This document shows positions 13,734 through 29,856 of a DNA stretch of 64,000 bases, in pieces. The notes under the pieces are model-generated. The model ran no database searches. It was not told the DNA's origin and saw nothing but the letters and a program-made list of their open reading frames with translations. Position numbers and translations under genes: made by a program. The number at the start of each line of letters is the position of its first letter. The first letter of the stretch is position 1. The DNA lies in the IMG/VR virus record IMGVR_UViG_3300023235_000008, positions 124,001 to 188,000 of that record; one strand, 5' to 3'.

Positions 13734-14756
13734 TTATTCCCAAGTATAATCGTATATATATTCTTTATCATCTACCGCAATCTTGTATACATCAAAATGA
13801 TTACCAATAGTATTCCATAAATCTTCAGGAGTTCCGCTATAATCTATTTTAGCGATAGGAAGATATCCTAAACTTAGTTTTGGGTCAGTATAAGATAAAT
13901 TGTTTTGTAGTATCCAAGATTTAAATCTATCAATTTCGCCAGTATGCCATTCGTGTTGTCCATAACGTACGTCACGACCAAATTCAATATCAAATTCACC
14001 TGAATAATATTCCAGTTGCGTGATAGCATCACATACCGTTTTGGTAAGTTCGGGGGCTTCTTCATCACGCCATACTTCAAATAATGTCTTGCCAATTTGT
14101 GCCCAATGCATATAAACATATCCAAATTTACGGTCGTAACCATTTTGAACAAATAACTTTCGGTGTTCATCGGTTAATTTATATCTTGGTGCATTTTTAA
14201 ACGATGTAATTTGGCTTGGTCTTATCCATTCGGGGCTTCTAATAGCTTTGCGTTGCGACAATACCAGACTTTCTACTTCATGACATAATAAATTTAATTG
14301 CTGTATAGCCCGTTTTGTTTTTTCTTGTGCTTCATTATATAACGGACTTATTTTACCCACTGTTCCTTGTAGGATTTCAAAATGATTATGTAAGCGATTC
14401 ATAATAAGATGTTTAATCGTAAGACCGAGCATCCATTCGCCCAACGGATACCCGTCATTAAAACGCACGGTGTCGGGCGTAAAGTAATCTTCGATTACAT
14501 AATCAATTGGATCGTTATTGATTGTTTGTATATGTGTGTTAAGCTCGTTACATAGATAATCCAAATCACGTGGCGTATTTGGGAATCCATGAAAACAAAA
14601 CCCTTTTTCAATACGATTCTTGTTTATCAATAGTTCTTTTAATGCGTGTTTCCAATCATGTGCCAATGGATTGTCCAATATAACAATAGGGAATGTTACT
14701 GTATTGCCATTGGATATATTCCTGTATGTTATTTCAATCATTTCTTCCATATCCAT
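13734..14756 (-). CDS. Hypothetical protein of the glycan-modification operon
   Basis: 340-aa ORF; LNLLCHEVE, YMHWAQIGKT. Confidence 0.75.
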   Translation of the reverse strand: MDMEEMIEITYRNISNGNTVTFPIVILDNPLAHDWKHALKELLINKNRIEKGFCFHGFPNTPRDLDYLCNELNTHIQTINNDPIDYVIEDYFTPDTVRFNDGYPLGEWMLGLTIKHLIMNRLHNHFEILQGTVGKISPLYNEAQEKTKRAIQQLNLLCHEVESLVLSQRKAIRSPEWIRPSQITSFKNAPRYKLTDEHRKLFVQNGYDRKFGYVYMHWAQIGKTLFEVWRDEEAPELTKTVCDAITQLEYYSGEFDIEFGRDVRYGQHEWHTGEIDRFKSWILQNNLSYTDPKLSLGYLPIAKIDYSGTPEDLWNTIGNHFDVYKIAVDDKEYIYDYTWE

Positions 14757-15049
14757 TTATCAGGTATTTCAGTTGCGCCATCTATCGGCGCTGGTTTATG
14801 GACTTTGCCAAACAATATCGGCGGCATAGCTGGATATTCTGCACCCCGCACCATTCCTGCGCAACGATAACCAAAACTTATGATATGTGGGCCTGCGTTT
14901 AACCCAACGCTTGAACCGTAGTAGTTATAATCTATCTTCGCAAATCGACAAGTTCGCTGCATATCGTCACGGGCACAGTTTTCGCACGTCCGATCCTTCA
15001 ACTCTGGTTGGGATAACATATCCCAAAACTCTTTTTTATTCTTTTTCAT
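14738..15049 (-). CDS. FW-tag microprotein, CxxC/WxW class
   Basis: NKKEFWDMLSQP…CENC…WIWKK. Confidence 0.75.
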   Translation of the reverse strand: MKKNKKEFWDMLSQPELKDRTCENCARDDMQRTCRFAKIDYNYYGSSVGLNAGPHIISFGYRCAGMVRGAEYPAMPPILFGKVHKPAPIDGATEIPDKWIWKK

Positions 15050-17360: not shown

Positions 17361-17716
17361 AGATTTGCGACAATCCTTTTCAATTCTGCAATTTTAGGCT
17401 TATTCTTCTCTATCATGAAGTCGTGAAACCCATTATGAAACCACTTATAATTATTATAACATACATCGGTTACATTTTCCATACAAAGTTTTTGTATGCT
17501 ATCCAATATACCAATAAATCTTAAATCATCTTCGGTTTCTGATCGCAACTTACTTTCAAGGTCGCGGATTGGTACTATAAAATCGCCATCATAATCTGAT
17601 AACAGAATGCTTTCCCATCCCATCGCATACAGCATATTGCGGGTGGCGGTCGATGCAGATTTAGCTATCGGGACAACGCCAAGGTCTTTTTTCGGAGACA
17701 CTATTACTTCAATCAT
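17357..17716 (-). CDS. Sulfotransferase-family-like short protein (possibly truncated)
   Basis: PIAKSAST (5'-PSB-like) and IRDLESKLRS (3'-PB-like). Confidence 0.45.
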   Translation of the reverse strand: MIEVIVSPKKDLGVVPIAKSASTATRNMLYAMGWESILLSDYDGDFIVPIRDLESKLRSETEDDLRFIGILDSIQKLCMENVTDVCYNNYKWFHNGFHDFMIEKNKPKIAELKRIVANL

Positions 17717-17925
17717 ATCGGTTTTCTACTTGTGATTTTTTTCGCTATCAAAATGACCTCGTAATCTTCTGCTTCTTTTCTTCTTTTGAAATCTGCTGGG
17801 TCTTCACACAAACTATCAAAGAAATCTTTTTTATCACGGCATTCTATTTCTTCGGGGGTTATTTCTACCGCCGCTTCATCAATGCGTGTTAATAAATCTT
17901 TAAAAAAATCGCTATCGTCAGTCAT
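17713..17925 (-). CDS. Microprotein with two FF variants of the tag
   Basis: DSDFFKDLL and DKKDFFDSLCEDP. Confidence 0.55.
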   Translation of the reverse strand: MTDDSDFFKDLLTRIDEAAVEITPEEIECRDKKDFFDSLCEDPADFKRRKEAEDYEVILIAKKITSRKPI

Positions 17926-18121
17926 TATATTTCCATTCCCATTTACTTCCAAGTTGTTGAAGTTGAAGTTTACACATAGTTCTTGCGTATTTGTTATCCG
18001 TTATCGGAAAGTCACAGTGCGACAAGTCATATGGATTGCCGTCCTCGGGCAAATACTTGCAACTTTCGCAAGACTTTACGCCATCCCATTCCAAGGCTTT
18101 CCAAAACTTATCTTTATTCAT
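17918..18121 (-). CDS. FW-tag microprotein, CxxC/WxW class
   Basis: MNKDKFWKAL…CESC…C…C…WEWKYND. Confidence 0.8.
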   Translation of the reverse strand: MNKDKFWKALEWDGVKSCESCKYLPEDGNPYDLSHCDFPITDNKYARTMCKLQLQQLGSKWEWKYND

Positions 18122-19298
18122 ATCCCATCGCTTTTGCTATGTGTGGATAAATGTCCGCAAAATCTTGCTTGCGTAATCTATCAGTTGCCTTCATATAGTT
18201 ACAAAATACTTTACCATCGCTGCCCGAACCTGCCTCAATGAAGTTAATAAGTTGTTGCCAGTTTTCATTGTATTGTGGCATGATATGCATACAATGATAC
18301 TTAATGTTATCAACCACTAGCCGTTTGCATTCCGGTGTCATATACTGGACATTCATATGCCATGGGTCGTGCAAATAGTTCCAATGGATTGAATCAAACT
18401 TACCCTCTTCTTCTGCCCACATCAATAACTGGTCAAGATAGAATACGTTTTGTATATTTATAGTGAAACAAAGTTGTCTGGTAAAAGTTGTGCTGTTAAT
18501 CCATGCTTTTTTAATAATAAATGAACGCACTTCATCCCATTTGGCACCATACCGTTCGTATTCAAATCGCTCACCAATATTATCAACAGAATATGCAAAC
18601 TCTACACTCTTAAAATCATATAGAAAATCATAATGGTGGACTTGTGTGCCATTAGTATTATAGTGCAACTCAATCGTATTTTTTACTTCGGTAGGAATAT
18701 TTGACAAGAAATCAATATGTTCTTTAATCATAAATGGTTCACCGCCAGTGAACTCAATGTACTTGATTTGTTCTACCTCAGTCATATTAATAAGGTTATC
18801 CCAAAAATGATGATTATCTTCTGGCCAGCGTCCTAGCTGAAGTTGCTTATATGCTAGATGTTCTTTGCCGCCGCCGTCACGTTCCATTTCTTCTTTAGCC
18901 CATTTCGAACTTGACCAAGAACCACAAATACGACATTTTAGATTACATTTGTTTCCAAGTTTCAAATCAAGAAACCACAAGCTATCGGGTTCAATGTCAG
19001 TGTAATCAATCTTATCCATAAGATGTTTTAGGCGAAATTGGGTATTCATACGCTTAGACATTTTGCCAGCAGATTCTTCTTCCCAACATCTCGAACACGT
19101 TTCGGGTTTCTCGCCATTCAAAAACTGTTGGCGTAGGTCTTTCATATAATCAGATTTATATGCGTCTTCGATAGTGTGTTTACGTAGGTCAATCCCCGGC
19201 ACTTCGTCACGAGCAAGACAGCACGGACGGCATCCGCCCATCGGCGTTGTTTCCATACTAATCCACGGTAACGGGCAAATATTTGGTAGTTTATTCAT
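18114..19298 (-). CDS. Radical SAM enzyme with N-terminal twitch/SPASM-like domain
   Basis: CPLPW…PCC…CSRC; CNLKCRIC; GGEPF. Confidence 0.9.
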   Translation of the reverse strand: MNKLPNICPLPWISMETTPMGGCRPCCLARDEVPGIDLRKHTIEDAYKSDYMKDLRQQFLNGEKPETCSRCWEEESAGKMSKRMNTQFRLKHLMDKIDYTDIEPDSLWFLDLKLGNKCNLKCRICGSWSSSKWAKEEMERDGGGKEHLAYKQLQLGRWPEDNHHFWDNLINMTEVEQIKYIEFTGGEPFMIKEHIDFLSNIPTEVKNTIELHYNTNGTQVHHYDFLYDFKSVEFAYSVDNIGERFEYERYGAKWDEVRSFIIKKAWINSTTFTRQLCFTINIQNVFYLDQLLMWAEEEGKFDSIHWNYLHDPWHMNVQYMTPECKRLVVDNIKYHCMHIMPQYNENWQQLINFIEAGSGSDGKVFCNYMKATDRLRKQDFADIYPHIAKAMGYE

Positions 19299-19531
19299 TT
19301 ATTAAGGTATCCCAAAACGCTGCCTTCTTTGATTTCTTCTTGCGGTCTATGTATATTTTTTTCATAAAAAATCTTCCTGCATTCACAACACGCTATTTCT
19401 TGTTCAATAATCATATATGGTTCTGAATCTTTGATTTTGACTTCTTTGGTTTCTCGGTTTACAACGAAACCGGCACCGCACCCACATCGCAACGGATTAC
19501 TTAAAGCATTCCAAAACTCGTCTTTATTTAT
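19295..19531 (-). CDS. FW-tag zinc-ribbon microprotein with ATA at the expected start
   Basis: ATA-NKDEFWNALSNPLRCGCG…CCEC. Confidence 0.65.
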   Translation of the reverse strand: MNKDEFWNALSNPLRCGCGAGFVVNRETKEVKIKDSEPYMIIEQEIACCECRKIFYEKNIHRPQEEIKEGSVLGYLNK

Positions 19532-20838
19532 TTCCAGTCTTTTAATCTCATTAACTCAGGAAACACATCATAAAAGTGTTCATTTCTTAGTGTATCTAGT
19601 TTACCAATCGTTTCGTTAAACTTGGGGATTAAATATGTATTATCTGTCCCATTCATAAAGTTCAATGCCGATTTAAAACCATTTGTCGCACGATGAAAAT
19701 CATCGCTCGGCTCAATGAATGCGATATGTTCATTGTATATTTCTTCGACTTCCTTCTTCATATCCTGTGGCAAAATATCCATACGGTATTCGTCTGGACC
19801 TTGTAGTATATTGACGTTCCAATCCTTGCCACGTACCAATCCAAGTTTAATCCACTCTCGATGAAAATCAGGAATATGATATGCGTTCATAACACTCATT
19901 GTCGAACTAACATAAAAATCCACATCAGGACAAACCCGCATCATTTCCTCACGATTAAGAACAACCTGTTTCCATTTTGTACCATACCGCATAAGCTCGC
20001 CTCGTTCATACGAAGCATCAAGACTTGCTCCAATACTCACACTGTCAAACTCTTTCCACATTTCAAGAACGTTTTCGCTCTTGTATTTCAACTCAGTAAA
20101 GTTAGTATTATATGATAGTTTAACATCATTTCGCCCTTGGCGCAATAGTTCTTTTAACACCTTATAATGTTCTTCCATCATTAGGGGTTCGCCACCAGCA
20201 AAATATACCTCCTGAATATACGGAATATGTGGCAATAGTTGTTCCCACGCATCGGTTTGATATCGACCAGCGTAAGTAACATTTTCCGCATCCTTTGGCA
20301 ACCAGTTATATTTCTTCTTTTCTTTAACCCATTTCGAACTAAAGATATCACCACACGAACGACATGCTAAGTTACATAGATTTGAAAATCGTATGTCATA
20401 ATAGCGTAGTTTAAAATCACCCGTCGTCCCATCGTTATTAATATCAACGTCTTTAATATTATGACCGAATGACTGATTGGCTGTATTGCGCATACTAAAG
20501 AAACCATTGCGTTCTTGTTCGTAGCATTTAGTGCATTCGTCGCATGATTTTTCATTTACCATATTGCTCCGAATGGTATTCATTTTATCATTATGGAAAA
20601 TCTCTTCCATTGTATTATCTCGCATTGAACCAACAGGGTTTTCGTATGTTGCTAGACAACAAGGATAAGCCTTACCATCTGGATATGCGTGTAGGTGTAC
20701 CCATGGCAACATACAAAACGTCTTACTATCCATAAGTAGCTCACGCTCGGTATCGGTTAACTCTTCTATTTTTATGTTAATAGGGGCACGATTACCATAA
20801 TCGTATTTTGTGTAATAATCGTCCTCGTCTTTACTCAT
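19528..20838 (-). CDS. Radical SAM enzyme with N-terminal twitch/SPASM-like domain
   Basis: FCMLPW…PCC…CTKC; CNLACRSC; GGEPL. Confidence 0.9.
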   Translation of the reverse strand: MSKDEDDYYTKYDYGNRAPINIKIEELTDTERELLMDSKTFCMLPWVHLHAYPDGKAYPCCLATYENPVGSMRDNTMEEIFHNDKMNTIRSNMVNEKSCDECTKCYEQERNGFFSMRNTANQSFGHNIKDVDINNDGTTGDFKLRYYDIRFSNLCNLACRSCGDIFSSKWVKEKKKYNWLPKDAENVTYAGRYQTDAWEQLLPHIPYIQEVYFAGGEPLMMEEHYKVLKELLRQGRNDVKLSYNTNFTELKYKSENVLEMWKEFDSVSIGASLDASYERGELMRYGTKWKQVVLNREEMMRVCPDVDFYVSSTMSVMNAYHIPDFHREWIKLGLVRGKDWNVNILQGPDEYRMDILPQDMKKEVEEIYNEHIAFIEPSDDFHRATNGFKSALNFMNGTDNTYLIPKFNETIGKLDTLRNEHFYDVFPELMRLKDWK

Positions 20839-21113
20839 CTAAACTTTCCATTTATTCTAAACTTATAATCATTATACCATTTACTCCCACACCGCTCACA
20901 TGTTGGCTGAAGGGTGCCCATGTCAGGTTGTTTTTGATGCCACGTCCAATCATTCGGGTATTTTGGTTGTGCTTTGTATACAGTATACGGAAAAGTAAAT
21001 ATCGGATGACCGTTTTCGCACTCAGCCGTTTCACCACCATACGCATATACCTTACTATGGTCTATTGACAATGCTTCAATAAAAGATTCTTTGCTTATAG
21101 CGTTTTGTACCAC
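20835..21113 (-). CDS. Tag-variant zinc-ribbon microprotein (start GTG 21113 or ATA 21098)
   Basis: SKESFIEAL…CENGH…CERCG. Confidence 0.65.
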   Translation of the reverse strand: MVQNAISKESFIEALSIDHSKVYAYGGETAECENGHPIFTFPYTVYKAQPKYPNDWTWHQKQPDMGTLQPTCERCGSKWYNDYKFRINGKFR

Positions 21114-22432
21114 GTGACAAGTTCCTCTGGAAATGTTTCTTCAAATAGTTTACCGCGGCGAATGTCATACTGTGTATAAAACTGTTTGAAATCGTGCTGC
21201 CTTGCTTCTACATCAATGGGGGCTGGTTCTCGTAGATAATCAATCAATCGTTCAATGTGATCTATTTCATGTGCGTGTAATAGTTTTGGGTCTTGTTTCA
21301 TTAACCATCCACCAAGGGCTGCACGGCGGGTTGAACGGATTTCTTCGGGAAGAACCAAGCAAGATTGAAAGCTCGGGAATCTAAGTATATTTAGTGTAAA
21401 ACTAGGTTGTTTACCCACAATCCAATGCTTTTGTCTTAACATAATAAGATGGTCAAGCATATCAGTTAGTGTCCACAAACACAATGCATTAACCGTGCAC
21501 ATAACACTGACATCATTGAATGTGCCATCGGCAAGAAGCGCATCCAAGCGTGATGTCCACTGATCGTAATCCAATCCATCACGAATATATTCGGCGTGTG
21601 CGTCTGTCGCTTCGCAACTAGTATACAATGTGCCGAAGTTAATAACATAATCATTGATAAGTCTATTAAATAATACGTCCGAACATCCAAGGTTTGAGTT
21701 CATTGAAATAGGTGGATACTTGAAAACGCTATCAGCACTATTTTTATAATCAGCATAAATCATATCAAGCAGTTTCCAAAAGTCCTGCGACATGGTTGGT
21801 TCACCGCCCGTAATACGCAACTCCTGCAACGATCCCTTTAAGTCGCTTTCCCACCACTTAAAGAACGCATCGACATATTGATTTGGTTCACCTACCTTGA
21901 AAGGTTGTGAAGCAGCATGTGTATGCGTAAAGTGATTGCGTCCGTCAGTTACTAAGCCTTCGTATGGACCGTTTTCTTTGATATCTTTTGCCCACGTTGT
22001 AGAAAACGCAGGGTTACAATACGAACAAGCAAAGTTACAAGTACGATCAAATGATATCTCTAGCGTCTTTAAGTCAACGTCTTGTTGTGGATTTGTTTTG
22101 TATGCAGTAAGGTTTTCCGACCAATCATAAATCTTTGATTTGTATACACGGTCAGGAACAGCATCAGTTTCCATATCCATCACTTTCCAACAGTAGTCGC
22201 AACCTTTAGGACGTTCACCACGCACCATTAACTCACGGTCGTGTTTCTTTTCCTTGGTGTTATGTAATAGCTTTGGATTGTTTACAACATCGTCAGATAT
22301 TTGATGTGCAGGGGGATGGTGACACGATGTAGTTTGACCGCTGCCTAACCATATAGTAGCGTTATACCATTTCGCCGAACAAAAGCTTGGCGATAGTTTA
22401 TCCAATACTTTTTTGTAATCTTTATCGTTCAC
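21095..22432 (-). CDS. Radical SAM enzyme with N-terminal twitch/SPASM-like domain
   Basis: FCSAKW…SCHHP…CDYCW; CNFACSYC; GGEPT. Confidence 0.9.
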   Translation of the reverse strand: MNDKDYKKVLDKLSPSFCSAKWYNATIWLGSGQTTSCHHPPAHQISDDVVNNPKLLHNTKEKKHDRELMVRGERPKGCDYCWKVMDMETDAVPDRVYKSKIYDWSENLTAYKTNPQQDVDLKTLEISFDRTCNFACSYCNPAFSTTWAKDIKENGPYEGLVTDGRNHFTHTHAASQPFKVGEPNQYVDAFFKWWESDLKGSLQELRITGGEPTMSQDFWKLLDMIYADYKNSADSVFKYPPISMNSNLGCSDVLFNRLINDYVINFGTLYTSCEATDAHAEYIRDGLDYDQWTSRLDALLADGTFNDVSVMCTVNALCLWTLTDMLDHLIMLRQKHWIVGKQPSFTLNILRFPSFQSCLVLPEEIRSTRRAALGGWLMKQDPKLLHAHEIDHIERLIDYLREPAPIDVEARQHDFKQFYTQYDIRRGKLFEETFPEELVTWYKTL

Positions 22433-22679
22433 TGAACATTATTCCAATCCGTTTCTGTTCTTTTTTGTATTGTAGAACGCTATGAAAATGGCTTTTCCAC
22501 GATTCTTGTTTTTCAGGATCGCTTACAATCTCGTCACAATCCTTACAAACTTCACATAACTTATAAATCATATACAGCTTTTTTTGTTTGCCTACCGTAA
22601 CTGTTGTGTTGGCGGCTTTGATGAGGATTGTAGGATGAATGCATTTAGTCAAACCATTCCAAAACTGTTCCTTATCCAT
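22422..22679 (-). CDS. FW-tag Cys-containing microprotein
   Basis: MDKEQFWNGLTKCIH…CEVCKDC. Confidence 0.75.
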   Translation of the reverse strand: MDKEQFWNGLTKCIHPTILIKAANTTVTVGKQKKLYMIYKLCEVCKDCDEIVSDPEKQESWKSHFHSVLQYKKEQKRIGIMFSER

Positions 22680-22788
22680 AAGGTTCCCATTCTTCACCAG
22701 TGAAAATCAACAATCCTTTTTCTTCGTCGTGGATTATTTCACCTTCAAATGGCACTACTGGCGGTGGCGAGGGCGTATCATCTGTCAT
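22672..22788 (-). CDS. 38-aa microprotein consisting of one tail-fibre-type motif (not in ORF track)
   Basis: MTDDTPSPPPVVPFEGEIIHDEEKGLLIFTGEEWEPYG; overlaps both neighbours. Confidence 0.65.
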   Translation of the reverse strand: MTDDTPSPPPVVPFEGEIIHDEEKGLLIFTGEEWEPYG

Positions 22789-24142
22789 ATTTGTTGCTCC
22801 TATACATACAATCATCCCAGAACTCAATCATCTCTGGAAACGTTTCTAAGAAGTTAGTGCCCCTACGGTTATCGTGTTCATTGAAGAATCGATAGAAGTT
22901 AACACGTGCTTCATTTAAATCTTTCTCGCCCATAGGAGTTTTCATATGGTCAAGGTTTCTCACCATCTTGGCAGCTTCGTAATCCTTGAATCCATCATAA
23001 CAAGTAGGACAAGACTCTGGACTATTACCTAAGTATTTTACCATATTTTCAAGCTGAAATCTATATGATTCGGGCAATATTTGAATCGATTGCCATACTG
23101 GATCAGTAAGAACTGGGATGTCAAACCACACACGCTGATAATCGTTGCTGTAAATCTTACGAAGACCAAGGATAGCGGTAAACAACTCAGGGAGACTAGT
23201 GATACTAAGGTTATTTAGGGTAATAATAAATGTAACACTATTCCTATGTGGAATGTCGTGTAAGAATGTATTGACGTTATCCCATAAACGATTGAAGTCA
23301 AGCCCGTGTCGAATATACTCAGCCTTTGAACCAAATGCATCCAATGAAACAAACTGCATAAAATGTTCTACATTCTCGCCGTCGCAAATACGTTTCGTAT
23401 AATCCATATACTTGTCAAAGATTTTAGGCTCTACACTAAAGTTGCTCGTTACGTTTAAGTGAAGGTCTGGTTTTGGATTTTCTAAAACATAGTCAAATAC
23501 TTTATAGGTGTTCGGGTCCATTAATGGTTCACCTCCTGTCATTCTGAAATGACGCAATGTTGGATACATTGCTGCCCAATCTTCCCAAAACTTTTCTACA
23601 TATGGATTATGTTCACGTTGTGGGATTGGGCGACGGTCACCAGCAAAATGCGCAGGATGGTTGTGCGGGGTAATGGTTGGCCACGCACCTTGTGATTTTG
23701 TTTCTGCCATCCATGATGAACTATATTGTGGCGAACAATAGCTACACTTTAAGTTACAGGCGTTATTAAAGTTCACCTCAACATACGATGGATTGACAAC
23801 GCCGCCCGCAACAACCTTATCAAAGTTATCCATTGCCCAAGGCTCACCACTACGATAGTGACGGTCTGACAGATTTCCTTGGTCTTCCATCTTCCAGCAA
23901 TAATCACAACCAGTAGGTCGCTTACCCGCAACCATCATTTGCTTTTGGATATCTTTTTCGGATGTTTCGTTTAACGTTTCACGTTTCAAATCCATCTTGT
24001 GCGGTGGCGGATGATAACATGAGTTAGTATGACCTGTTGTTAGGTGAAGGCTGGTTTGTAACCATTTAGCCAAGCAGAATGTTTCGGAAACATCGTCCAG
24101 TTTCTTCTTGGCGTGTAATGCATCGTCGTTATAGTTACTCAC
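22778..24142 (-). CDS. Radical SAM enzyme with N-terminal twitch/SPASM-like domain
   Basis: FCLAKW…SCYHP…CDYCW; CNLKCSYC; GGEPL. Confidence 0.9.
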   Translation of the reverse strand: MSNYNDDALHAKKKLDDVSETFCLAKWLQTSLHLTTGHTNSCYHPPPHKMDLKRETLNETSEKDIQKQMMVAGKRPTGCDYCWKMEDQGNLSDRHYRSGEPWAMDNFDKVVAGGVVNPSYVEVNFNNACNLKCSYCSPQYSSSWMAETKSQGAWPTITPHNHPAHFAGDRRPIPQREHNPYVEKFWEDWAAMYPTLRHFRMTGGEPLMDPNTYKVFDYVLENPKPDLHLNVTSNFSVEPKIFDKYMDYTKRICDGENVEHFMQFVSLDAFGSKAEYIRHGLDFNRLWDNVNTFLHDIPHRNSVTFIITLNNLSITSLPELFTAILGLRKIYSNDYQRVWFDIPVLTDPVWQSIQILPESYRFQLENMVKYLGNSPESCPTCYDGFKDYEAAKMVRNLDHMKTPMGEKDLNEARVNFYRFFNEHDNRRGTNFLETFPEMIEFWDDCMYRSNKYDR

Positions 24143-25053
24143 CAGTTCTCCCGCTTTCTGATTATATCAATCTCGGTTGTCATAAAGTCTTCCTGTACGT
24201 GATTCTTTTTATAGAAGTGTTTAAAAAACTTTGATTGGTCACTATCATATCGCACCAATGGGATATTCAATCGTGACTTAACAATATCAATGGTTGCTTT
24301 GATATATCTATCATCGTTATTATTCGCATAACCATCGTATTGCATTTTCAATACGTCGAAGTCTTGAACGCCCGTATAATCCCAATCGGTTAGCATAACG
24401 GCGTGTAATCCGAATAAAGCACCATCCATTGCTGAAACACCAAACTCGGCGTCGGCTCCTGTATTCAACCATACCATAAGATTATCAAGGTTCTTATCGT
24501 GAACCATTTGCTCAAACTCTGGTAGTGTAGGACGAACACCTTTATTCAGACACATCTTTACGCCTTCACGAAACCCTGCTCTCCAAGCATTGAACTCACT
24601 TTGATTGGGATGCGTAGTTCCGTAAACATTCCACATAGCGTGATAGTTAGGGTCATAGCAAAACTCTACGTTGTTTTCATCTGACCCATCACTATTTTCG
24701 TGCGTTCGCATATTCATAATGAAATCACGATGCCAAATACTAATACCGCCGTTGCCGTATCTCAATCCATTTATTGCATTGATTGCCTTCCAACGATATG
24801 CACTTGGTACATCAGGTGCTTCAAATGTTTGATTAAAGAAGTTTGGATCAGGCATATGGTCACCATCAATCAACACAAACCATTCGGTTTCACTGATTTC
24901 AGCTGCCGCTTTGTGTGCGGAATCACTGCCTTTTACACCATCGACACGATTTGCCCATGGCACCATATTCTGGATTTCTACCCAAAACTCTTCTTTTTTT
25001 GGTTCGTCAAATGTTAGATAGACCACATCAAGGTCTGCAACATCAATCTTCAT
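24139..25053 (-). CDS. GT-A fold glycosyltransferase-like protein
   Basis: GVKGSDSAHKAAA, DxD motif IDGD, NGLRYGNGG, AWRAGFREGVKM. Confidence 0.7.
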   Translation of the reverse strand: MKIDVADLDVVYLTFDEPKKEEFWVEIQNMVPWANRVDGVKGSDSAHKAAAEISETEWFVLIDGDHMPDPNFFNQTFEAPDVPSAYRWKAINAINGLRYGNGGISIWHRDFIMNMRTHENSDGSDENNVEFCYDPNYHAMWNVYGTTHPNQSEFNAWRAGFREGVKMCLNKGVRPTLPEFEQMVHDKNLDNLMVWLNTGADAEFGVSAMDGALFGLHAVMLTDWDYTGVQDFDVLKMQYDGYANNNDDRYIKATIDIVKSRLNIPLVRYDSDQSKFFKHFYKKNHVQEDFMTTEIDIIRKRENW

Positions 25054-25222
25054 ATTCTACCCAAAAGTCTTTTTCAAAATCAAACGTATATTGAATGTCG
25101 GTAGTAGTATCTCGGTATACGTGAATACCAATGCCGATATTCTTGTCTGCCTGTAAATAACTCTTATTAGGCTGCGGTGGCATTTGTAATACTTGCCAAA
25201 ACTTATCTCTGCTTATGTTCAA
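25043..25222 (-). CDS. FW-tag microprotein (PPQP class)
   Basis: SRDKFWQVLQMPPQP…FEKDFWVE; TTG start assumed. Confidence 0.7.
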   Translation of the reverse strand: MNISRDKFWQVLQMPPQPNKSYLQADKNIGIGIHVYRDTTTDIQYTFDFEKDFWVEYED

Positions 25223-25400
25223 TCCATTTATCCTTTTCATAATTAAAAACCCATTTTAAACCCGTCTGTATATCTACCCAAATAGTAACCATAGGAAGTT
25301 CTTTATTATATATACCGAGCTGATATACCGTCAACATACTTTCTTCGCTCGGCTGTGGGGGTTCGCCTAACCCTTCCCAAAAATCTTCTTTACTTAACAC
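25203..25400 (-). CDS. FW-tag microprotein (PPQP class)
   Basis: GTG-LSKEDFWEGLGEPPQP…YEKDKWIE. Confidence 0.7.
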   Translation of the reverse strand: MLSKEDFWEGLGEPPQPSEESMLTVYQLGIYNKELPMVTIWVDIQTGLKWVFNYEKDKWIEHKQR

Positions 25401-25539
25401 AAATCCATTCTTTTCCATTCCAAATCTCCAATCCACCTGTGTCGTTGTTATAAAATACGGAACCCACTGGGCGGGTCGGCGGTGGTGCCTTCAATGCTTC
25501 CCAAAAATCTTCTTTATTCAAAGTCTTTTCGGTATTCAT
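25390..25539 (-). CDS. FW-tag microprotein carrying a tail-fibre-type motif
   Basis: LNKEDFWEALKAPPPTRPVGSVFYNNDTGGLEIWNGKEW. Confidence 0.75.
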   Translation of the reverse strand: MNTEKTLNKEDFWEALKAPPPTRPVGSVFYNNDTGGLEIWNGKEWICVK

Positions 25540-25861
25540 AGAAGTCTTCGGTGCCGATGAAGTATGGGTTATTTTTTCTAGTGCCATACATTCCAGTCTC
25601 CGATTTGACAAGGTTGTATGTTTGTGGCTTAGATGGCGTTTTAATCTCGCCATCAATGATTTTATTATCACTTCTTATACTTTCCCATACGCTGCGCTCA
25701 ACGATAATGAAATCACCTTCGGGTGGTTCAACATTGTATTCAATAGCGACTTGTTTAAGGATATCGCCAGTTTCCTTGTTATAGTATAACCTATATTCAG
25801 GCGTAAAGTCAATAACTGGTTCAGCATCAAATAGAACTAATCCTTCTAAAAAGTTACTCAA
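25514..25861 (-). CDS. Hypothetical protein (EYRLYYNKETG motif)
   Basis: ORF in operon; TTG start at 25861 assumed from overlap. Confidence 0.65.
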   Translation of the reverse strand: MSNFLEGLVLFDAEPVIDFTPEYRLYYNKETGDILKQVAIEYNVEPPEGDFIIVERSVWESIRSDNKIIDGEIKTPSKPQTYNLVKSETGMYGTRKNNPYFIGTEDFYEYRKDFE

Positions 25862-25997
25862 AATCTTCCTCTCTATATTCTTCTCCAAATATCTCTTTTA
25901 ATCCCGGCATTAACTGTCGCAATACAGCAGCACGGCGAATAGCCTCTTTACTTTTCACTGGATTTTTTAAAGTTTTCCAAAACTCATGTTTATTCAT
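25854..25997 (-). CDS. FW-tag microprotein carrying a capsid-N-terminus-like peptide (47 aa, not in ORF track)
   Basis: MNKHEFWKTLKNPVKSKEAIRRAAVLRQLMPGLKEIFGEEYREEDFE. Confidence 0.75.
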   Translation of the reverse strand: MNKHEFWKTLKNPVKSKEAIRRAAVLRQLMPGLKEIFGEEYREEDFE

Positions 25998-26185
25998 TTC
26001 TTGTTCCATTCCCAGTGCTTACGATCTCCCGTTGCACTCACTAATATACTCACACAATCCACGTGTCCCGGCGCTGTTGCGTGTTTACAACTAAAACACG
26101 TTTTATCGTTTCCTAATAGAAACCAAAACTAGTTATCGTTTCCTAATAGAAACCAAAACTCTTCTTTACTACAATCGTTGTTCGT
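25994..26185 (-). pseudogene. Inactivated FW-tag CxxC/WxW microgene
   Basis: ACG-NNDCSKEEFWFLLGNDN*FWFLLGNDKTCFSCKH…C…WEWNKK; ACG at the start position and a TAG created by a duplication. Confidence 0.75.
26103..26160. repeat. 28-bp exact tandem duplication (period 30)
   Basis: ttatcgtttcctaatagaaaccaaaact at 26103-26130 and 26133-26160. Confidence 0.95.
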
Positions 26186-27020
26186 ATCGTCTGATGAGTT
26201 CGTCACTGCAAAAATCCTTCTGTTGATAATGGAATGGAAACATTTGATAGTATCCTCCCACAATAAAATCCATATCTTCCGTCAACGCCCAACTCACCAT
26301 ATCCGTCCACTGATTGGAATGAAAGCCCTGTAGTTCTGGCTTCATATGAACAAAGGTCGGTTGAACACCCGGCATATAACAACGTTCTTCACCAATCATC
26401 AATGCAGCTAACGCATATACTTCATCGGTTGTTGGGCGTTCAATACGGCAGTTCTTTAAAATATTATCCCGATACATTGACCAGTTCTCAAATATTTCTT
26501 TAGCCGCCATAAAAAAGTCAGCCATTGTCTTTGAATATCTGAAATAACTAAAACCATTATATGTATTTAGAAGGCTGTTATCATCGAATACTTTTCGGAA
26601 TCGGCGGTCAGTAATAAGGTTGCCACGATAATCAACTACGTCCGTAGTTATACAAATATCCTTGGCTCTCATATGATCCCACCAATGTGAAACATCACGT
26701 GTGAAAATCATATCAACATCAAGGTTAACTGTCTCTTTAAATGGCGTAGCGTGGTACAGTTTCCAAGCATTAGCCAACTTCCATTCATCGCCAGCAGCGG
26801 CGTCACCGAAAGGTATATCAACAATGTAATCAAATACTTTGCGATGTTTATCGGTGATTTGCGCTTTAGTCTTTTCATCAACGGCGATAGCATACTTGTT
26901 AATGCGTTGTGTTGCCTTGATAGAAAGGGCTTGTAAATATGCTATACGCAAGTAATCAACATCGCTGTTCTGAACAAAAGCAAAATATCCTTGCTGGTCT
27001 TTGAACTGTTCTTTATTCAT
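26169..27020 (-). CDS. GT8-like glycosyltransferase
   Basis: TPFKETVNLDVDMIF (DxD), TTDEVYALA, FVHMK, FHYQQK. Confidence 0.75.
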   Translation of the reverse strand: MNKEQFKDQQGYFAFVQNSDVDYLRIAYLQALSIKATQRINKYAIAVDEKTKAQITDKHRKVFDYIVDIPFGDAAAGDEWKLANAWKLYHATPFKETVNLDVDMIFTRDVSHWWDHMRAKDICITTDVVDYRGNLITDRRFRKVFDDNSLLNTYNGFSYFRYSKTMADFFMAAKEIFENWSMYRDNILKNCRIERPTTDEVYALAALMIGEERCYMPGVQPTFVHMKPELQGFHSNQWTDMVSWALTEDMDFIVGGYYQMFPFHYQQKDFCSDELIRRYEQRL

Positions 27021-27216
27021 TGTTCCATTCCCATTTATCATTGCCGCCAGCTTGACGTTGATCTACCATACCGCATCTAGTGCATCTATCGCACACGTCA
27101 AGATCATTGTAGTCCGCATCCCTCCCGATAATATGCAAAGTATCTTCCCATTTACAGTTGCCGCATACTCTTTCAGCAGGTTCACATAAAGTTTTCCAAA
27201 ACTCCTGTTTATTCAT
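27013..27216 (-). CDS. FW-tag microprotein, CxxC/WxW class
   Basis: MNKQEFWKTLCEP…CGNC…CDRCTRC…WEWNNE. Confidence 0.8.
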   Translation of the reverse strand: MNKQEFWKTLCEPAERVCGNCKWEDTLHIIGRDADYNDLDVCDRCTRCGMVDQRQAGGNDKWEWNNE

Positions 27217-27424
27217 TTTCACCATCCCAATGCCAATGGTCAGCTGCTCGTCTGATTTCCCGCGGGGGTATACCCGATATAGCACGAACGCAAGTATACT
27301 TAACGTGTAGACTACATTCCATGCCAAGGCTAGGTCCAGCGTCCATCATATGCGAACAGTTATTACACGTATGTGTCGATGGTTCACGCAGTGTGTCCCA
27401 AAACTTTTCTTTATCTTTATTCAT
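27209..27424 (-). CDS. FW-tag microprotein, CxxC/WxW class
   Basis: MNKDKEKFWDTLREP…CNNC…C…C…WHWDGENE. Confidence 0.8.
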   Translation of the reverse strand: MNKDKEKFWDTLREPSTHTCNNCSHMMDAGPSLGMECSLHVKYTCVRAISGIPPREIRRAADHWHWDGENE

Positions 27425-27632
27425 ATTTTCCATTCCATTCATATATACTATAATGACGGACGTATGTGTAATCGCCGTTTTCTTTTTCTCGTTTTAACGC
27501 CATCATAGCATCATTAAAGTTACAGGAAAAACAAGGTGACGGTGCATTTTTTGATTTTCCTTCATGAATACAAGTGTTACAACTCGGCTTTGGGCTTTTT
27601 AATGTTTCCCAAAACTTTTCTTTATCGTTCAT
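27417..27632 (-). CDS. FW-tag microprotein, CxxC/WxW class
   Basis: MNDKEKFWETLKSP…CNTC…CFSC…YEWNGKYE. Confidence 0.8.
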   Translation of the reverse strand: MNDKEKFWETLKSPKPSCNTCIHEGKSKNAPSPCFSCNFNDAMMALKREKENGDYTYVRHYSIYEWNGKYE

Positions 27633-27819
27633 CGACACCATTCCATTCCCAATAATCTTCAGTAATAAAGAAACCTTCAGTAAAGAAACGAAACCTACGA
27701 TGCTTAATACAATCTGCGTCCAGTGAACACCCTTGGTCTACCAAATGAATACAGTTTCGGCAGTTATGGTGTGTTGGTTCACGCAATGCTTTCCAAAACT
27801 TTTCTTTATCTTTATTCAT
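27622..27819 (-). CDS. FW-tag microprotein, CxxC/WxW class
   Basis: MNKDKEKFWKALREP…CRNC…C…C…WEWNGVDER. Confidence 0.8.
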   Translation of the reverse strand: MNKDKEKFWKALREPTHHNCRNCIHLVDQGCSLDADCIKHRRFRFFTEGFFITEDYWEWNGVDER

Positions 27820-27825
27820 ATAAGA

Positions 27826-28086
27826 TTATGGAAAGACAGGCAGGGGTTCATCGTCGTCGGTGTCGTCTTTGCCATTCCATTTCCAATAACTGTATTCGCC
27901 GTGCTGTTCACTCACGTGTGCGCTTTTACAACGACCACAAAATGCACTACCATTCACATTACCAAAATCGTGATACGAATATCTTTCGGGAGAATAGAAA
28001 CCGGGACGTGTACAAGTACCACATGATTTTGCAGGTGTTTTTAAATCTTGCCAGAACTTTTCTTTATCATCGAGGTTTTTATACAT
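27826..28086 (-). CDS. FW-tag microprotein, CxxC/WxW class
   Basis: DDKEKFWQDLKTP…CGTC…CGRC…WKWNGK. Confidence 0.8.
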   Translation of the reverse strand: MYKNLDDKEKFWQDLKTPAKSCGTCTRPGFYSPERYSYHDFGNVNGSAFCGRCKSAHVSEQHGEYSYWKWNGKDDTDDDEPLPVFP

Positions 28087-28088
28087 TA

Positions 28089-28970
28089 TTATTTTTTCTT
28101 TCCGGTGCCTGATAACTGCGTCGGTATATATGGACAGTAATAAAATCCTTCATCCATCACTTCCGTTTTACCACGTAACCCATCCCAAAACAGTTTCTTT
28201 CTATTAAGAATATCAATCTGTTTTATAAGCGAAGGTTTATTCATAACGTGTAAATCAAGACCATTTACTTTGGTTTGATATTCCTTGCCATTATTATCAT
28301 ATTCAATGACGACCGTGCCATCCTGCCTAATATCTACCACTTCTTCTTGTGTTCCGACCGAAGCCAATGGAAACGTGAAATGGTTTTCTGTATCATTATA
28401 TCCCGAAAGCAACTGTAATGCAATACTTAATGCAAAATCATTTCGATATGGGGTGGGTCTGAAGTTGAATAAATGCCCGTAATAATGATAGTTTTGGCGA
28501 ACTTCTTGCATCATATCAAATACCGACTTGGAAAACTCAGTCTTTTTAAAATAGATACACGTTGCCCAACGCATAGGAAAACTTGTCTTGCTCATCATTC
28601 TATCAGATGCAAATGTATTTGTGCCCGTAACGTCATATACCTTATCGGCGCATTGAAACTCATGCGCTGAACCGAAATATTTCTTCAAGTTATCTGACAT
28701 AATCAAATAGTCAGCATCAAGTAATAATGTTTCATCATACGGCGAAAGGGAATATGCGGTCATGCGATCCGTATTATGCCAATCCACTTGTTCATACGTA
28801 TTATCACGCCATATAAATGTTCGACTGTTAGCGTTTGTCGGATTTCCAGTGATAATCGTGGTCGGAATATTCAAATGATGAAGTATTAGCTGGCGATTAA
28901 ACTCGGCAATCTTTTCATAATCAATCTGATCATTATTGTAAGCGAAGATTAATGCGCCCTTTGTTGTCAT
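28089..28970 (-). CDS. GT8-like glycosyltransferase with a fused FW-tag/capsid-like C-terminal tail
   Basis: SPYDETLLLDADY (DxD), YRNDFALSIA, DLHVMNK; tail RKKLFWDGLRGKTEVMDEGFYYCPYIPTQL. Confidence 0.75.
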   Translation of the reverse strand: MTTKGALIFAYNNDQIDYEKIAEFNRQLILHHLNIPTTIITGNPTNANSRTFIWRDNTYEQVDWHNTDRMTAYSLSPYDETLLLDADYLIMSDNLKKYFGSAHEFQCADKVYDVTGTNTFASDRMMSKTSFPMRWATCIYFKKTEFSKSVFDMMQEVRQNYHYYGHLFNFRPTPYRNDFALSIALQLLSGYNDTENHFTFPLASVGTQEEVVDIRQDGTVVIEYDNNGKEYQTKVNGLDLHVMNKPSLIKQIDILNRKKLFWDGLRGKTEVMDEGFYYCPYIPTQLSGTGKKK

Positions 28971-29827: not shown

Positions 29828-29856
29828 ATTATATCACGTATTGGAATATATGTCAA
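29828..29856 (-). promoter_or_regulatory. Perfect sigma70 promoter
   Basis: TTGACA-N17-TATAAT with extended TG; ATG only 5 nt downstream. Confidence 0.85.

What the first reader, a model, noticed from the sequence alone, without database searches (positions are those of the whole stretch)
18114..27819. Cassette boundaries share an ATGAATAA start/stop octamer
Seen on the - strand: ATGAATAA forms the gene start at 18121, 19298, 25997, 27020, 27216, 27424 and 27819, usually also holding the upstream stop. ATGAACGATAA occurs at 27632 and GTGAACGATAA at 22432. Consecutive cassettes are thus flanked by the same short direct repeat, and the resident GT at 27020 itself begins MNKEQF. The starts at 27424 and 27819 share ATGAATAAAGATAAAGAAAAGTTTTGG…TGCGTGAACCA. 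Inference: cassettes are gained, lost and shuffled by microhomology recombination at coupling junctions without polar effects, an integrase-free array. The tag might even derive from a resident gene start.
Basis: partly seen in the sequence, partly recalled or inferred. Interest (0 to 1): 0.6.

Follow-up and report, generated by a model that had tools for sequence, protein, structure and literature searches.

The report
Shared start of repeated phage genes
The repeated eight-letter start/stop junction is the conserved beginning (Met-Asn-Lys) of a large family of small cysteine-rich genes packed head to tail in an uncultured salt-lake jumbo phage; it is not a special recombination tag, although the gene array itself does gain and lose members.

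Summary
ATGAATAA sits at all seven named minus-strand gene starts: 14 copies in the window against 6.8 expected, 7 of them in 9.7 kb.

The octamer is not an independent tag. Five of the seven starts belong to one paralogous family of small (about 55-100 aa) Cys-rich proteins. Their N-terminus reads M-N-K-x-K-E-x-F-W-x-x-L-x-x-P...CxxC and their C-terminus W-E-W-N/D-G. I count 39 ORFs of this family in the 230-kb viral record.

An MNK start spelled ATGAATAA carries TGA and TAA in the two other frames. In a genome where 51% of same-strand neighbours overlap, it therefore closes the upstream gene automatically.

Eight-base overlaps are common here (35), but they use many different octamers. The six that use ATGAATAA all touch a family member.

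Relatives carry 0 to 5 family genes between the same two glycosyltransferase-like genes, so cassettes are gained and lost, and no integrase was found. However, relatives use other junctions (ATGAGTGA, ATGACTAA, 17-base overlaps). The exchange tracts I could resolve run across a junction or end inside genes. Orthologues of the "resident GT" begin MKRT/MS, so its MNK start is derived.

Verdict: ordinary coupling architecture plus an uncharacterised, fast-evolving multigene family. The microhomology-tag mechanism is not supported.

The parts
27826..28086 (-). Family member 1 of the tandem array (86 aa, MYKNLDDKEKFW...WKWNG...). It starts 2 bases after the stop of the upstream GT-like gene.
   Evidence: hmmsearch E 4e-17; gene model.
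27622..27819 (-). Family member 2 (65 aa, MNKDKEKFW...WEWNGVDER). Octamer start at 27819, 6 bases after the upstream stop.
   Evidence: The exact protein is found on 19 public contigs.
27417..27632 (-). Family member 3 (71 aa, MNDKEKFW...YEWNGKYE). Its start, ATGAACGATAA, overlaps the upstream gene by 11 bases.
   Evidence: Orthologue in L010 at 53% aa identity.
27209..27424 (-). Family member 4 (71 aa, MNKDKEKFW...WHWDGENE). Octamer start with an 8-base overlap.
   Evidence: Orthologue in L010 (48% aa) behind the same ATGAATAA junction.
27013..27216 (-). Family member 5 (67 aa, MNKQEFW...WEWNNE). Octamer start with an 8-base overlap. It has no counterpart at this place in L010. Its nearest paralogue lies next to the gp13 gene on another contig of the same population.
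26169..27020 (-). The 'resident GT': a 283-aa GT-A fold, GT8-like (glycogenin/UGGT-like) protein. Its octamer start overlaps member 5 by 8 bases.
   Evidence: AlphaFold pLDDT 94. Foldseek matches to glycogenin, E 6e-7. No Pfam match. Orthologue N-termini.
28089..28970 (-). Paralogous GT-like gene (293 aa) that bounds the array upstream. It contains an in-frame internal ATGAATAA at 28237-28244.
   Evidence: The L007 orthologue abuts the second GT directly.
25998..26168 (-). Decayed family member with no start codon of its own. An in-frame TAG was created by an exact 28-base tandem duplication (26103-26130 and 26133-26160). It ends ...HWEWNKK with its TGA inside the octamer at 25997.
   Evidence: Sequence; the repeat finder D6.
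25854..25997 (-). 47-aa gene with the family N-terminus (MNKHEFWKTLKNP) but no Cys-rich body. It is a truncated or chimeric member.
   Evidence: It shares 32 bases at 97% identity with the start of 27013-27216.
17918..18121 (-). Family member (67 aa, MNKDKFW...WEWKYND). Its octamer start overlaps the radical SAM gene upstream by 8 bases.
18114..19298 (-). N-terminal-twitch radical SAM gene (394 aa) that begins MNKLPNI with the octamer. It is not a family member.
   Evidence: NF033640, E 3e-94.
22422..22679 (-). 85-aa gene with the family N-terminus (MDKEQFW). Its stop lies in GTGAACGATAA, the start of the next radical SAM gene (21095-22432).
   Evidence: Absent from L007.
14738..15049 (-). Outlying family member (103 aa, MKKNKKEFW...KWIWKK).
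   Evidence: E 7e-13.
25043..25521 (-). Three small overlapping genes (59, 71 and 43 aa) that carry only the N-terminal K-D/E-x-F-W-x-x-L...P module on unrelated bodies. One of them starts TTGAATAA.
29828..29856 (-). Perfect sigma-70 consensus promoter-like site (TTGACA, 17-base spacer, TATAAT, with TG) upstream of the gene string that contains the array. No such site lies at any cassette boundary.
   Evidence: pattern match only.

Best explanation
ATGAATAA is a by-product of two ordinary things.

(1) A lineage-specific multigene family. The window comes from a 230-kb fragment (CheckV 65%) of an uncultured salt-lake jumbo myovirus, distantly related to the Atu_ph07/GAP32 group. The record carries at least 39 ORFs for small Cys-rich proteins. 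Their conserved N-terminus is M-(N/D)-K-(D)-K-E-x-F-W-x-x-L-x-x-P-x3-C-x-x-C, and MNK is the commonest start. The C-terminus is W-E-W-N/D-G followed by 2-4 residues, and the middle is hypervariable.

(2) Extreme gene packing with overlapping, presumably translationally coupled genes. MNK spelled ATG AAT AAA contains TGA in frame +1 and TAA in frame +2. Any upstream gene that runs up to it in another frame must therefore end inside the octamer. Family genes usually follow family genes, whose tails end ...WEWNGxxE. The same junction therefore recurs by descent (tandem paralogues) and by dual-coding constraint.

Shown: the family, the counts, the overlaps, the variable copy number in relatives, and the mosaic patches between paralogues.

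Inferred: translational coupling, and that arrays grow and shrink by ordinary homologous or unequal recombination over the 30-90-base conserved gene ends rather than at the 8-mer.
For: Family:
- Iterated hmmsearch over all ORFs of the record finds 39 members. 34 of 383 modelled genes are members.
- The alignments show invariant F, W, L, P, CxxC and WxW.
- 209 representative clusters exist in 1.84 billion proteins. MNK is the commonest start among them (25 of 90), followed by MDK with 11.

Octamer tied to the family:
- 21 modelled genes start with the octamer, and 15 of them are family members.
- The genome-wide excess (46 against about 27) matches that number.

Packing:
- 175 of 340 same-strand neighbour pairs overlap: 50 by 4 bases, 41 by 1, 35 by 8 and 10 by 11.
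- The 35 eight-base overlaps use about 20 different octamers. The 6 that use ATGAATAA all have a family gene on at least one side.
- Of the 21 octamer starts, 12 hold the upstream stop (6 TAA, 6 TGA), as the frame logic predicts.
- Overlapping starts carry a Shine-Dalgarno core less often (34%) than non-overlapping ones (52-59%). Random positions score 4%.

Protein-level conservation: at the conserved residues the synonymous codons are mixed. P is CCA 11 / CCT 9 / CCG 6; G is GGC 7 / GGA 7 / GGT 5; K is AAA 24 / AAG 7.

Junction by descent: the closest relative, L010, keeps ATGAATAA between the orthologues of 27417-27632 and 27209-27424, although those proteins are only about 50% identical.

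The GT's MNK is derived.
Against: - The conserved L uses TTA/TTG in 30 of 32 members, against 47% genome-wide. Some constraint at DNA level, or shared ancestry, is therefore not excluded.
- Two octamer starts (the radical SAM gene at 19298 and the GT at 27020) are not family genes, so the family alone does not explain all seven. MNK is, however, also the commonest N-terminus among non-family genes (14 genes).
- Gene starts come from my own simple gene model, not from experiment.
- Translational coupling is inferred from geometry only.
Confidence: 0.85

Rival explanations
1. The 8-base octamer itself is a microhomology crossover site. Cassettes are excised, inserted and shuffled octamer to octamer, forming an integrase-free array.
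For: - Cassettes 27209-27424 and 27013-27216 are each bracketed by exact ATGAATAAA (9-10 bases).
- Copy number in the slot varies from 0 to 5 among relatives.
- No integrase was found.
- Relative to L010, the window has one extra cassette (27013-27216) lying between two octamers.
Against: - At the corresponding empty site L010 has ATGAGTGA and one codon fewer, not the predicted ATGAATAA join.
- Other relatives use ATGACTAA or 17-base overlaps.
- The tract shared by cassette 27013-27216 and its gp13-locus paralogue spans the junction (window 27239-27075) and ends inside the gene. The octamer differs within that tract.
- The 60-base 98% patch between 27750-27809 and record 33917-33976 starts after the octamer.
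- Four contigs that cross the whole array in other samples show no cassette variant.
- All contig 'joints' found are cross-matches to paralogues.
Confidence: 0.06
2. A coding analogue of PeSL shuffling. The longer conserved gene ends act as portable homology for the phage's own recombination machinery. These ends are about 30-90 bases spanning the W-E-W-N-G codons, the stop/start overlap and the MNKxKExFW..L..P codons. They drive tandem duplication, deletion, ectopic conversion and chimera formation. This adds to the best explanation rather than excluding it.
For: - Direct repeats of 31-86 bases at 68-84% identity sit at every cassette boundary (D1-D5).
- A 33-base exact repeat brackets the gp13-locus paralogue.
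- Patches of 60 bases (98%) and about 67 bases (100%) are shared by otherwise diverged paralogues at distant loci.
- Record 22286-22713 and 23048-23703 share 46 bases at 96% across a junction and then diverge into unrelated bodies.
- At least 7 proteins carry only the N-terminal module on other bodies.
- In L007, inserted blocks are bracketed by 68-base and 47-base repeats of junction sequence.
Against: - The module could recur because the N-terminal peptide is functionally selected, not because it recombines.
- No recombination event was observed directly.
- The one contig that joins two loci (L022) may be an assembly chimera through the 67-base exact repeat.
Confidence: 0.4
3. The conserved start is a nucleotide-level translation signal. 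An A-rich, unstructured initiation region that also places stops in both other frames would be selected for efficient termination-reinitiation.
For: - MNK is also the commonest N-terminus of non-family genes (14 genes).
- Overlapping starts depend less on a Shine-Dalgarno core.
- Gene 27622-27819 has no recognisable Shine-Dalgarno core and starts 6 bases after a stop.
Against: - Only 15 of 34 family genes use the octamer. D (GAT) is as frequent as N at position 2 of the motif.
- Most 8-base overlaps use other octamers.
Confidence: 0.2
4. The small Cys-rich proteins are precursor peptides (conserved leader, hypervariable Cys-rich core) modified by the five neighbouring N-terminal-twitch radical SAM enzymes. 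This would be a phage RiPP-like system.
For: - Five N_Twi_rSAM paralogues lie in the same gene string.
- Four of them are followed by a small gene bearing the FW motif or a relative of it.
- A conserved N-terminus with a hypervariable Cys-rich middle resembles precursor families.
Against: - About 25 of the 34 called members lie more than 80 kb from the radical SAM genes.
- The C-terminus is conserved as well, and the four near-invariant Cys with F/W and WxW look like a small metal-stabilised fold.
- L007 keeps the radical SAM genes but has no family gene in the GT slot.
- Nothing was tested for binding. I did not run a complex prediction because I make no binding claim.
Confidence: 0.05

Closest known systems
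Overlapping, translationally coupled genes of phages and bacteria (ATGA, TAATG, and 8-base overlaps of the ATGnnTAA type)
   Same: Genes on the same strand, with the start codon inside or beside the upstream stop. The overlap lengths 1, 4, 8 and 11 dominate. Overlapping starts depend less on a Shine-Dalgarno core.
   Different: Nothing essential differs. The only peculiarity is that one spelling recurs, because one gene family supplies many of the starts.
PeSL-mediated modular shuffling in T4-type phages (Arbiol et al. 2010, PMC2839356; Comeau et al. 2014, PMC4122927)
   Same: Integrase-free gain, loss and replacement of small ORFan genes in hyperplastic regions, attributed to recombination between short repeated sequences at gene boundaries. 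The window region behaves as such a hyperplastic region among relatives.
   Different: PeSLs are intergenic promoter plus stem-loop cassettes, and their mini-circles were demonstrated. Here the genes overlap, there are no promoters or terminators at the boundaries, the repeats are coding sequence of one protein family, and no circles or recombinants have been shown.
Integron gene-cassette arrays
   Same: A co-oriented string of small, promoterless genes of variable number.
   Different: No IntI-type integrase, no attC inverted repeats, and a phage structural-region context.
T-even internal-protein loci with a shared N-terminal capsid-targeting leader (recalled from Repoila et al. 1994, EMBO J; not re-read here)
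   Same: Small, fast-evolving phage proteins that share a short conserved N-terminal peptide on diverse bodies, located in polymorphic loci.
   Different: There is no evidence here of packaging or cleavage. The residue before the conserved P is E in only about a quarter of members. The family also has a conserved C-terminus and conserved Cys.
Expanded paralogous small-protein families of large phages and giant viruses (a generic kind)
   Same: Dozens of copies per genome, tandem clusters, and rapid divergence. Orthologues are about 50% identical where the neighbouring GT is 89% identical.
   Different: This family matches no Pfam, PHROG or NCBIfam model and no isolated phage. It is known only from metagenomes.

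Membership tests
Integron-like cassette array | Tyrosine-recombinase integrase (IntI) next to the array | tested here: not met
   PF00589 search of the whole 230-kb record found no match, while the controls were positive. The record is only about 65% complete.
Integron-like cassette array | attC-type imperfect inverted repeat at each cassette's 3' end | tested here: not met
   The repeat finder on 25800-28300 finds no inverted repeats at the boundaries, only direct repeats of coding sequence.
PeSL-type modular shuffling (T4-like phages) | Intergenic early promoter plus stem-loop terminator motif flanking the shuffled ORFs | tested here: not met
   Array genes overlap by 8-11 bases or lie 2-6 bases apart. 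The promoter/terminator scan finds none at the junctions.
PeSL-type modular shuffling (T4-like phages) | Indels between close relatives bounded by the repeated motif; mini-circles detectable | tested here: inconclusive
   Relatives are either 100% identical or at most 82% identical in DNA, so breakpoints cannot be placed to the base. Only contigs were available, not raw reads.
Translationally coupled overlapping gene pairs | Same strand, with the downstream start codon overlapping or within a few bases of the upstream stop | tested here: met
   Overlaps of 8 bases at 18121, 27020, 27216 and 27424, 11 bases at 27632 and 22432, and a 6-base gap at 27819.
Translationally coupled overlapping gene pairs | Downstream translation depends on upstream translation | not testable with these tools
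   This needs reporter fusions or ribosome profiling. The only indirect sign is the lower Shine-Dalgarno frequency at overlapping starts (34% against 52-59%).
The FW...CxxC...WEWNG small-protein family (defined here) | N-terminal K-E-x-F-W-x-x-L-x-x-P, then CxxC, further Cys, and a C-terminal W-x-W-N/D-G; 55-105 aa | tested here: met
   Met for 17918-18121, 27013-27216, 27209-27424, 27417-27632, 27622-27819, 27826-28086 and 14738-15049. Not met for the GT (26169-27020) or the radical SAM gene (18114-19298). Only the N-terminal part is met for 25854-25997 and 22422-22679.
N-terminal-twitch radical SAM (NCBIfam NF033640) | Full-length match above the curated cut-off (170 bits) | tested here: met
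   All five genes score 261-392 bits.
   The fold criterion is met: pLDDT 94 and Foldseek probability 1.0 with E 6e-7 to glycogenin, TM 0.4-0.5. There is no sequence-family match. Catalytic residues were not checked.

The most novel reading that the evidence does not exclude
The conserved ends of this hypervariable small-protein family (about 30-90 bases spanning the W-E-W-N-G codons, the stop/start overlap and the MNKxKExFW..L..P codons) serve two roles. They are a protein module and also portable homology. The phage's own recombination system would use them to duplicate, delete, convert and graft cassettes anywhere in the genome without an integrase. This would be a coding-sequence counterpart of PeSL shuffling, and it would generate a repertoire of at least 39 variable-loop proteins, perhaps for host takeover or counter-defence.
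Probability: 0.25. Interest if true: 0.6.

Novelty: new member of a known kind. Interest (0 to 1): 0.3.

Why it matters
As stated, the finding would have meant a new, integrase-free cassette system based on an 8-base tag. The evidence reduces it to a familiar picture: overlapping coupled genes plus a tandemly expanded paralogue family, whose shared start spells the octamer.

Three things remain of moderate interest:
- The family itself is uncharacterised and metagenome-only. It makes up about 9% of the genes of a jumbo phage and evolves far faster than its neighbours.
- Its N-terminal module appears on unrelated proteins.
- There are clear traces of ectopic exchange between copies.

The practical lesson for genome scans is that a recurring start/stop string in a packed phage genome should first be tested for paralogy of the flanking genes.

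Tried and rejected
- Megablast of the region against isolated phages gave no match. tblastn of a family member against them also gave no match.
- The search for related loci in IMG/VR with the GT and with a radical SAM gene found nothing.
- Pfam, PHROGs and NCBIfam gave nothing credible for the small proteins. The ESM Atlas returned only unnamed viral clusters.
- The AlphaFold model of a family member from a 132-sequence alignment was poor (pLDDT 65, only an N-terminal helix), so I made no fold search on it.
- Reads test: all 17 runs that hold the DNA (salt-lake metagenomes) are kept as contigs only. Coverage is 3-6x and the pieces are 100% identical. The three 'joints' (27229 to 27075, 27440 to 27750, 29564 to 29710) have short sides. 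The first two are explained by the gp13-locus paralogue and by the paralogue at record 33913-34152. This says nothing about rare variants.
- Contig L022 joins the array to the gp13 locus, with the break at window 27075, and contig L020 ends at that same base. Because the two loci share about 67 identical bases there, I cannot tell a true recombinant from an assembly chimera.
- I considered that the GT's MNKEQF start is a graft of a family 5' end through the shared GAACAGTT. The closest orthologue already has EQF, so only MNK against MS differs, which is too little to call.
- I considered an L-x-E prohead-protease site in the leader. E is present in only about a quarter of members, so I rejected it as a defining feature.
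- I did not run a complex prediction of a radical SAM enzyme with a peptide, because the report makes no binding claim.

Full report
WHAT THE WINDOW IS

The window is bases 124001-188000 of a 230,059-base IMG/VR virus record that CheckV rates 65% complete. A 1163-aa baseplate wedge protein (46059-49550) is 34-36% identical to those of Agrobacterium phage Atu_ph07, Salicola phage SCTP-2, Cronobacter phage GAP32 and related jumbo myoviruses. No isolated phage matches at the DNA level. Public runs that hold the DNA are salt-lake metagenomes.

On the minus strand, downstream of the baseplate and fibre genes, lies a long co-oriented gene string. It contains:
- five paralogous radical SAM genes, all matching NCBIfam NF033640, "twitch domain-containing radical SAM protein", at 261-392 bits;
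- a NodU-like carbamoyltransferase;
- two paralogous proteins of about 290 aa;
- many small genes.

I modelled the 283-aa one of the two paralogues (26169-27020, pLDDT 94). Its fold matches glycogenin and UGGT, that is GT-A/GT8-like.

THE OBSERVATION

ATGAATAA occurs 14 times in the window, against 6.8 +/- 2.2 in shuffles. Seven copies lie on the minus strand at exactly the named places. I built a simple gene model for the whole record, using codon log-odds, chain optimisation and a start-context matrix. It gives 383 genes and places gene starts at all seven.

The TAA of the octamer is the upstream stop at 18121, 27020, 27216 and 27424. The TGA is the stop of a weak 65-aa ORF at 19298 and of a decayed gene frame at 25997. 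At 27819 the upstream stop lies 6 bases before the ATG. The two 11-base variants and the 27-base identical start of 27424 and 27819 are also as described.

WHAT THE OCTAMER BELONGS TO

Translating the array shows that the small genes are paralogues. They begin M-N-K-(D)-K-E-x-F-W-x-x-L-x-x-P, continue with C-x-x-C and a variable, Cys-containing middle, and end W-E-W-N/D-G plus two to four residues.

A profile built from six window members and iterated over all ORFs of the record converges on 39 ORFs. 34 of them are in my gene set, about 9% of genes. 23 of these 34 lie on the plus strand between 1 and 55 kb of the record, nine lie in the window's minus-strand string, and two lie elsewhere.

In 1.84 billion representative proteins the profile finds 209 clusters at E <= 0.001. 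All are short proteins, and MNK is their commonest start (25 of 90), followed by MDK. No Pfam, PHROG or NCBIfam model and no isolated phage matches. The family is real, uncharacterised and known only from metagenomes.

Genome-wide, 15 of the 21 genes that start with the octamer are members. The genome-wide excess of the octamer (46 against about 27 expected) is about that size.

WHY IT "HOLDS THE UPSTREAM STOP"

ATG AAT AAA read one base later gives TGA. Read two bases later, it gives TAA at positions 6-8. A gene that runs up to an MNK start in either other frame must therefore end inside the octamer.

This genome is packed. 175 of 340 same-strand neighbour pairs overlap: 50 by 4 bases, 41 by 1, 35 by 8 and 10 by 11. 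The 35 eight-base overlaps use about twenty spellings (ATGACTGA, ATGAGTAA, ATGGATAA and others). Only six use ATGAATAA, and each of those has a family gene on one or both sides. Of the 21 octamer starts, 12 hold the upstream stop (six TAA, six TGA).

Overlapping starts carry a Shine-Dalgarno core less often (34%) than others (52-59%; random positions 4%). That fits termination-reinitiation, but it is only indirect evidence.

The octamer is not the general junction of this genome. It is specific to one gene family, because it is that family's first eight bases.

IS THE CONSERVATION IN DNA OR IN PROTEIN?

At the conserved residues the synonymous codons are mixed: P is CCA 11, CCT 9, CCG 6; G is GGC 7, GGA 7, GGT 5; K is AAA 24, AAG 7; F is TTT 27, TTC 6. 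This is close to genome usage. The exception is L, which is almost always TTA or TTG. Position 2 is N in 11 members and D in 11.

The repeats that the repeat finder reports at the cassette boundaries are 31-86 bases long at 68-84% identity, which is ordinary diverged coding homology. There are no inverted repeats, promoters or terminators at the boundaries. The one perfect sigma-70-like site lies upstream of the whole string, at 29856-29828.

RELATIVES: IS THE ARRAY DYNAMIC, AND WHERE ARE THE BREAKS?

The GT-like protein has hundreds of metagenomic homologues. I fetched the contigs of six of them. The number of family genes between the two GT-like genes is:
- 5 in the window;
- at least 4 in L010 (GT 89% identical);
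- 3 in L013;
- 2, together with a MORN-like gene and a further small gene, in L009;
- 1 in L011, which has another member just downstream of the GT;
- at least 1 in L012;
- 0 in L007, where the two GT genes overlap by ATGA.

Gain and loss are therefore real, and other slots of the string also differ between the window and L007. In the window these variable slots are mostly filled by genes with the FW N-terminus.

The junctions themselves differ:
- L010 keeps ATGAATAA between the orthologues of 27417-27632 and 27209-27424.
- L010 has ATGAGTGA before its GT.
- L011 has ATGAATAA after its first GT, but a 17-base overlap before the second.
- L013 starts its members from an ATG inside the W-E-W-D-E codons.
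- The gp13-locus copies use ATGACTAA.

DNA identity to these relatives is 66-83%, so breakpoints cannot be placed to the base. Homology to the GT simply begins 9-20 bases after its ATG and ends at its stop. The window's extra cassette relative to L010 (27013-27216) does lie between two octamers. However, L010's empty site is not the predicted octamer join. I rate that comparison inconclusive.

POPULATION COPIES AND RESOLVED EXCHANGE TRACTS

The exact 65-aa protein of 27622-27819 is on 19 public contigs. The ten I fetched are 100% identical to the window where they overlap, apart from one mismatch in L020 and the insertion in L014. Four of them cross the whole array without any cassette difference. 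One variant (L014) has a 21-base tandem duplication at about 17689, unrelated to the octamer.

Contig L022 follows the window from 27928 to 27075 and then continues into a locus next to a gp13 neck gene. That locus is not in the 230-kb record but is on other contigs from the same samples. The alignment shows why. A paralogue at the gp13 locus shares window 27239-27075 at 84% identity, and the last 67 or so bases are identical, while the 3' ends are unrelated.

That tract begins 23 bases upstream of the ATG, runs across the junction (where the octamer differs: ATGAATAA against ATGACTAA) and ends inside the gene. L022 itself may be an assembly chimera through the identical stretch. The two parental arrangements, though, are each supported by several contigs.

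A second patch, 60 bases at 98%, links 27750-27809 to record 33917-33976 in a gene that is otherwise different. Contig "joints" in four further runs are cross-matches to these paralogues. Exchange between copies clearly happens, but in both resolved cases its edges are not at the octamer.

THE "RESIDENT GT" START

Of the 40 orthologues listed, 39 begin differently. The nearer ones begin M-(K/R)-R-T-x-E-F-(Q/K)-D-Q-Q-G-Y-F, and the closest begins MSEQFKDQQ. The F and the EQ of the window's MNKEQF are native to the GT, and only MNK is new. The tag therefore does not derive from the GT. If anything, the GT start was reshaped to sit in an 8-base overlap behind a family gene.

HOW IT MOST LIKELY WORKS

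Shown:
- a large paralogous family, with tandem members that overlap by 8-11 bases;
- variable copy number among relatives;
- mosaic patches between copies;
- a decayed copy (25998-26168) and N-terminal-only chimeras (25854-25997; 25043-25521; 29188-29490; record 23215-23703).

Inferred:
- The string is transcribed from upstream and translated by coupling.
- Arrays expand and contract by unequal or ectopic homologous recombination over the conserved gene ends, with selection keeping only in-frame, coupled outcomes.
- The family diversifies fast. Orthologues are 48-54% identical where the GT is 89% identical.

The protein's function is unknown. The near-invariant F-W, L, P, four Cys and W-x-W, together with a predicted N-terminal helix, suggest a small metal-stabilised scaffold with a variable loop. 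I would guess a host-takeover or counter-defence role, with low confidence.

COMPARISON WITH KNOWN SYSTEMS

- The junction is standard overlapping-gene coupling.
- The region behaves like the hyperplastic regions of T4-type phages, where PeSL repeats mediate integrase-free shuffling and mini-circles (PMC2839356; PMC4122927). The PeSL features (intergenic promoter plus stem-loop) are absent here.
- Integron features (IntI, attC) are absent.
- A resemblance to T-even internal-protein loci with a shared N-terminal leader is recalled from memory and was not tested.

VERDICT

Its core claim, an 8-base recombination tag possibly born from the GT start, is not supported. I rate the novelty as a new member of a known kind, and the interest as modest.

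Noticed in passing
window 26103-26160 (-), within 25998-26168: An exact 28-base tandem duplication (spacing 30) inside a family gene that has lost its start. The duplication creates an in-frame TAG, so this is a decaying copy lying between the GT-like gene and the 47-aa gene.
   Followed up: partly
window 16011-24142 (-): Five paralogous N-terminal-twitch radical SAM genes (NF033640). They lie with a NodU-like carbamoyltransferase (11290-12912) and two GT8-like proteins, directly downstream of baseplate and fibre genes. This may be a sugar- or surface-modification island. Relatives carry different numbers of these genes.
   Followed up: partly
L007 12601-12647 / 14222-14268 and 14143-14210 / 15887-15954: Relative to the window, L007 has about 3.3 kb inserted exactly at the junction of the 298/304-aa gene and a radical SAM gene. 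The two inserted blocks are bracketed by 47-base (81%) and 68-base (88%) direct repeats of the junction's two sides. A 34-aa chimeric ORF (radical SAM 5' end fused to the 298-aa gene's 3' end) sits between them. It looks like a scar from stacking two alternative cassettes.
   Followed up: partly
window 25043-25521, 29188-29490 (-); record 34136-34345, 175539-175871: The N-terminal K-D/E-x-F-W-x-x-L...P module occurs on at least seven small proteins with unrelated, Cys-poor bodies. 34 genes have it in the first 30 residues. Beyond residue 30 it occurs only 16 times in 57,970 residues. It may be a functional N-terminal tag.
   Followed up: partly
window 27075-27239 against L024 7030-7200; window 27750-27809 against record 33917-33976: Short patches of 98-100% identity (60-67 bases) inside otherwise diverged paralogues at distant loci. 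This suggests recent ectopic conversion. Several contigs end or switch exactly at 27075.
   Followed up: yes
window about 17689 (gene 17357-17716, -): Population variant L014 carries an in-frame 21-base tandem duplication here. It is otherwise identical over 20 kb.
   Followed up: no
window 32956-46059 (-): A single 4367-aa ORF lies between the baseplate wedge gene and the fibre-like genes. The public annotation lists only faint CBM_5_12 and FG-GAP hits.
   Followed up: no
window 15036-15787 (-); record 3727-4062 (+): A second small paralogue set beginning M-x-N-G-(I/M)-H-T-D-A-N-G..., which looks MORN-like. A similar gene in L009 has a faint MORN_2 hit. One copy also starts with ATGAATAA.
   Followed up: no
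window 29828-29856 (-): A perfect 12-of-12 sigma-70 consensus promoter-like site with an extended -10 TG, 6 bases upstream of the 111-aa gene that heads the string containing the array.
   Followed up: no
L007 7583-7717; contig of P0008 (no DNA held): Relatives carry an HNH-like 44-aa fragment and a SegE-type GIY-YIG gene in neighbouring slots. Homing endonucleases are therefore another source of local variability in this region.
   Followed up: no
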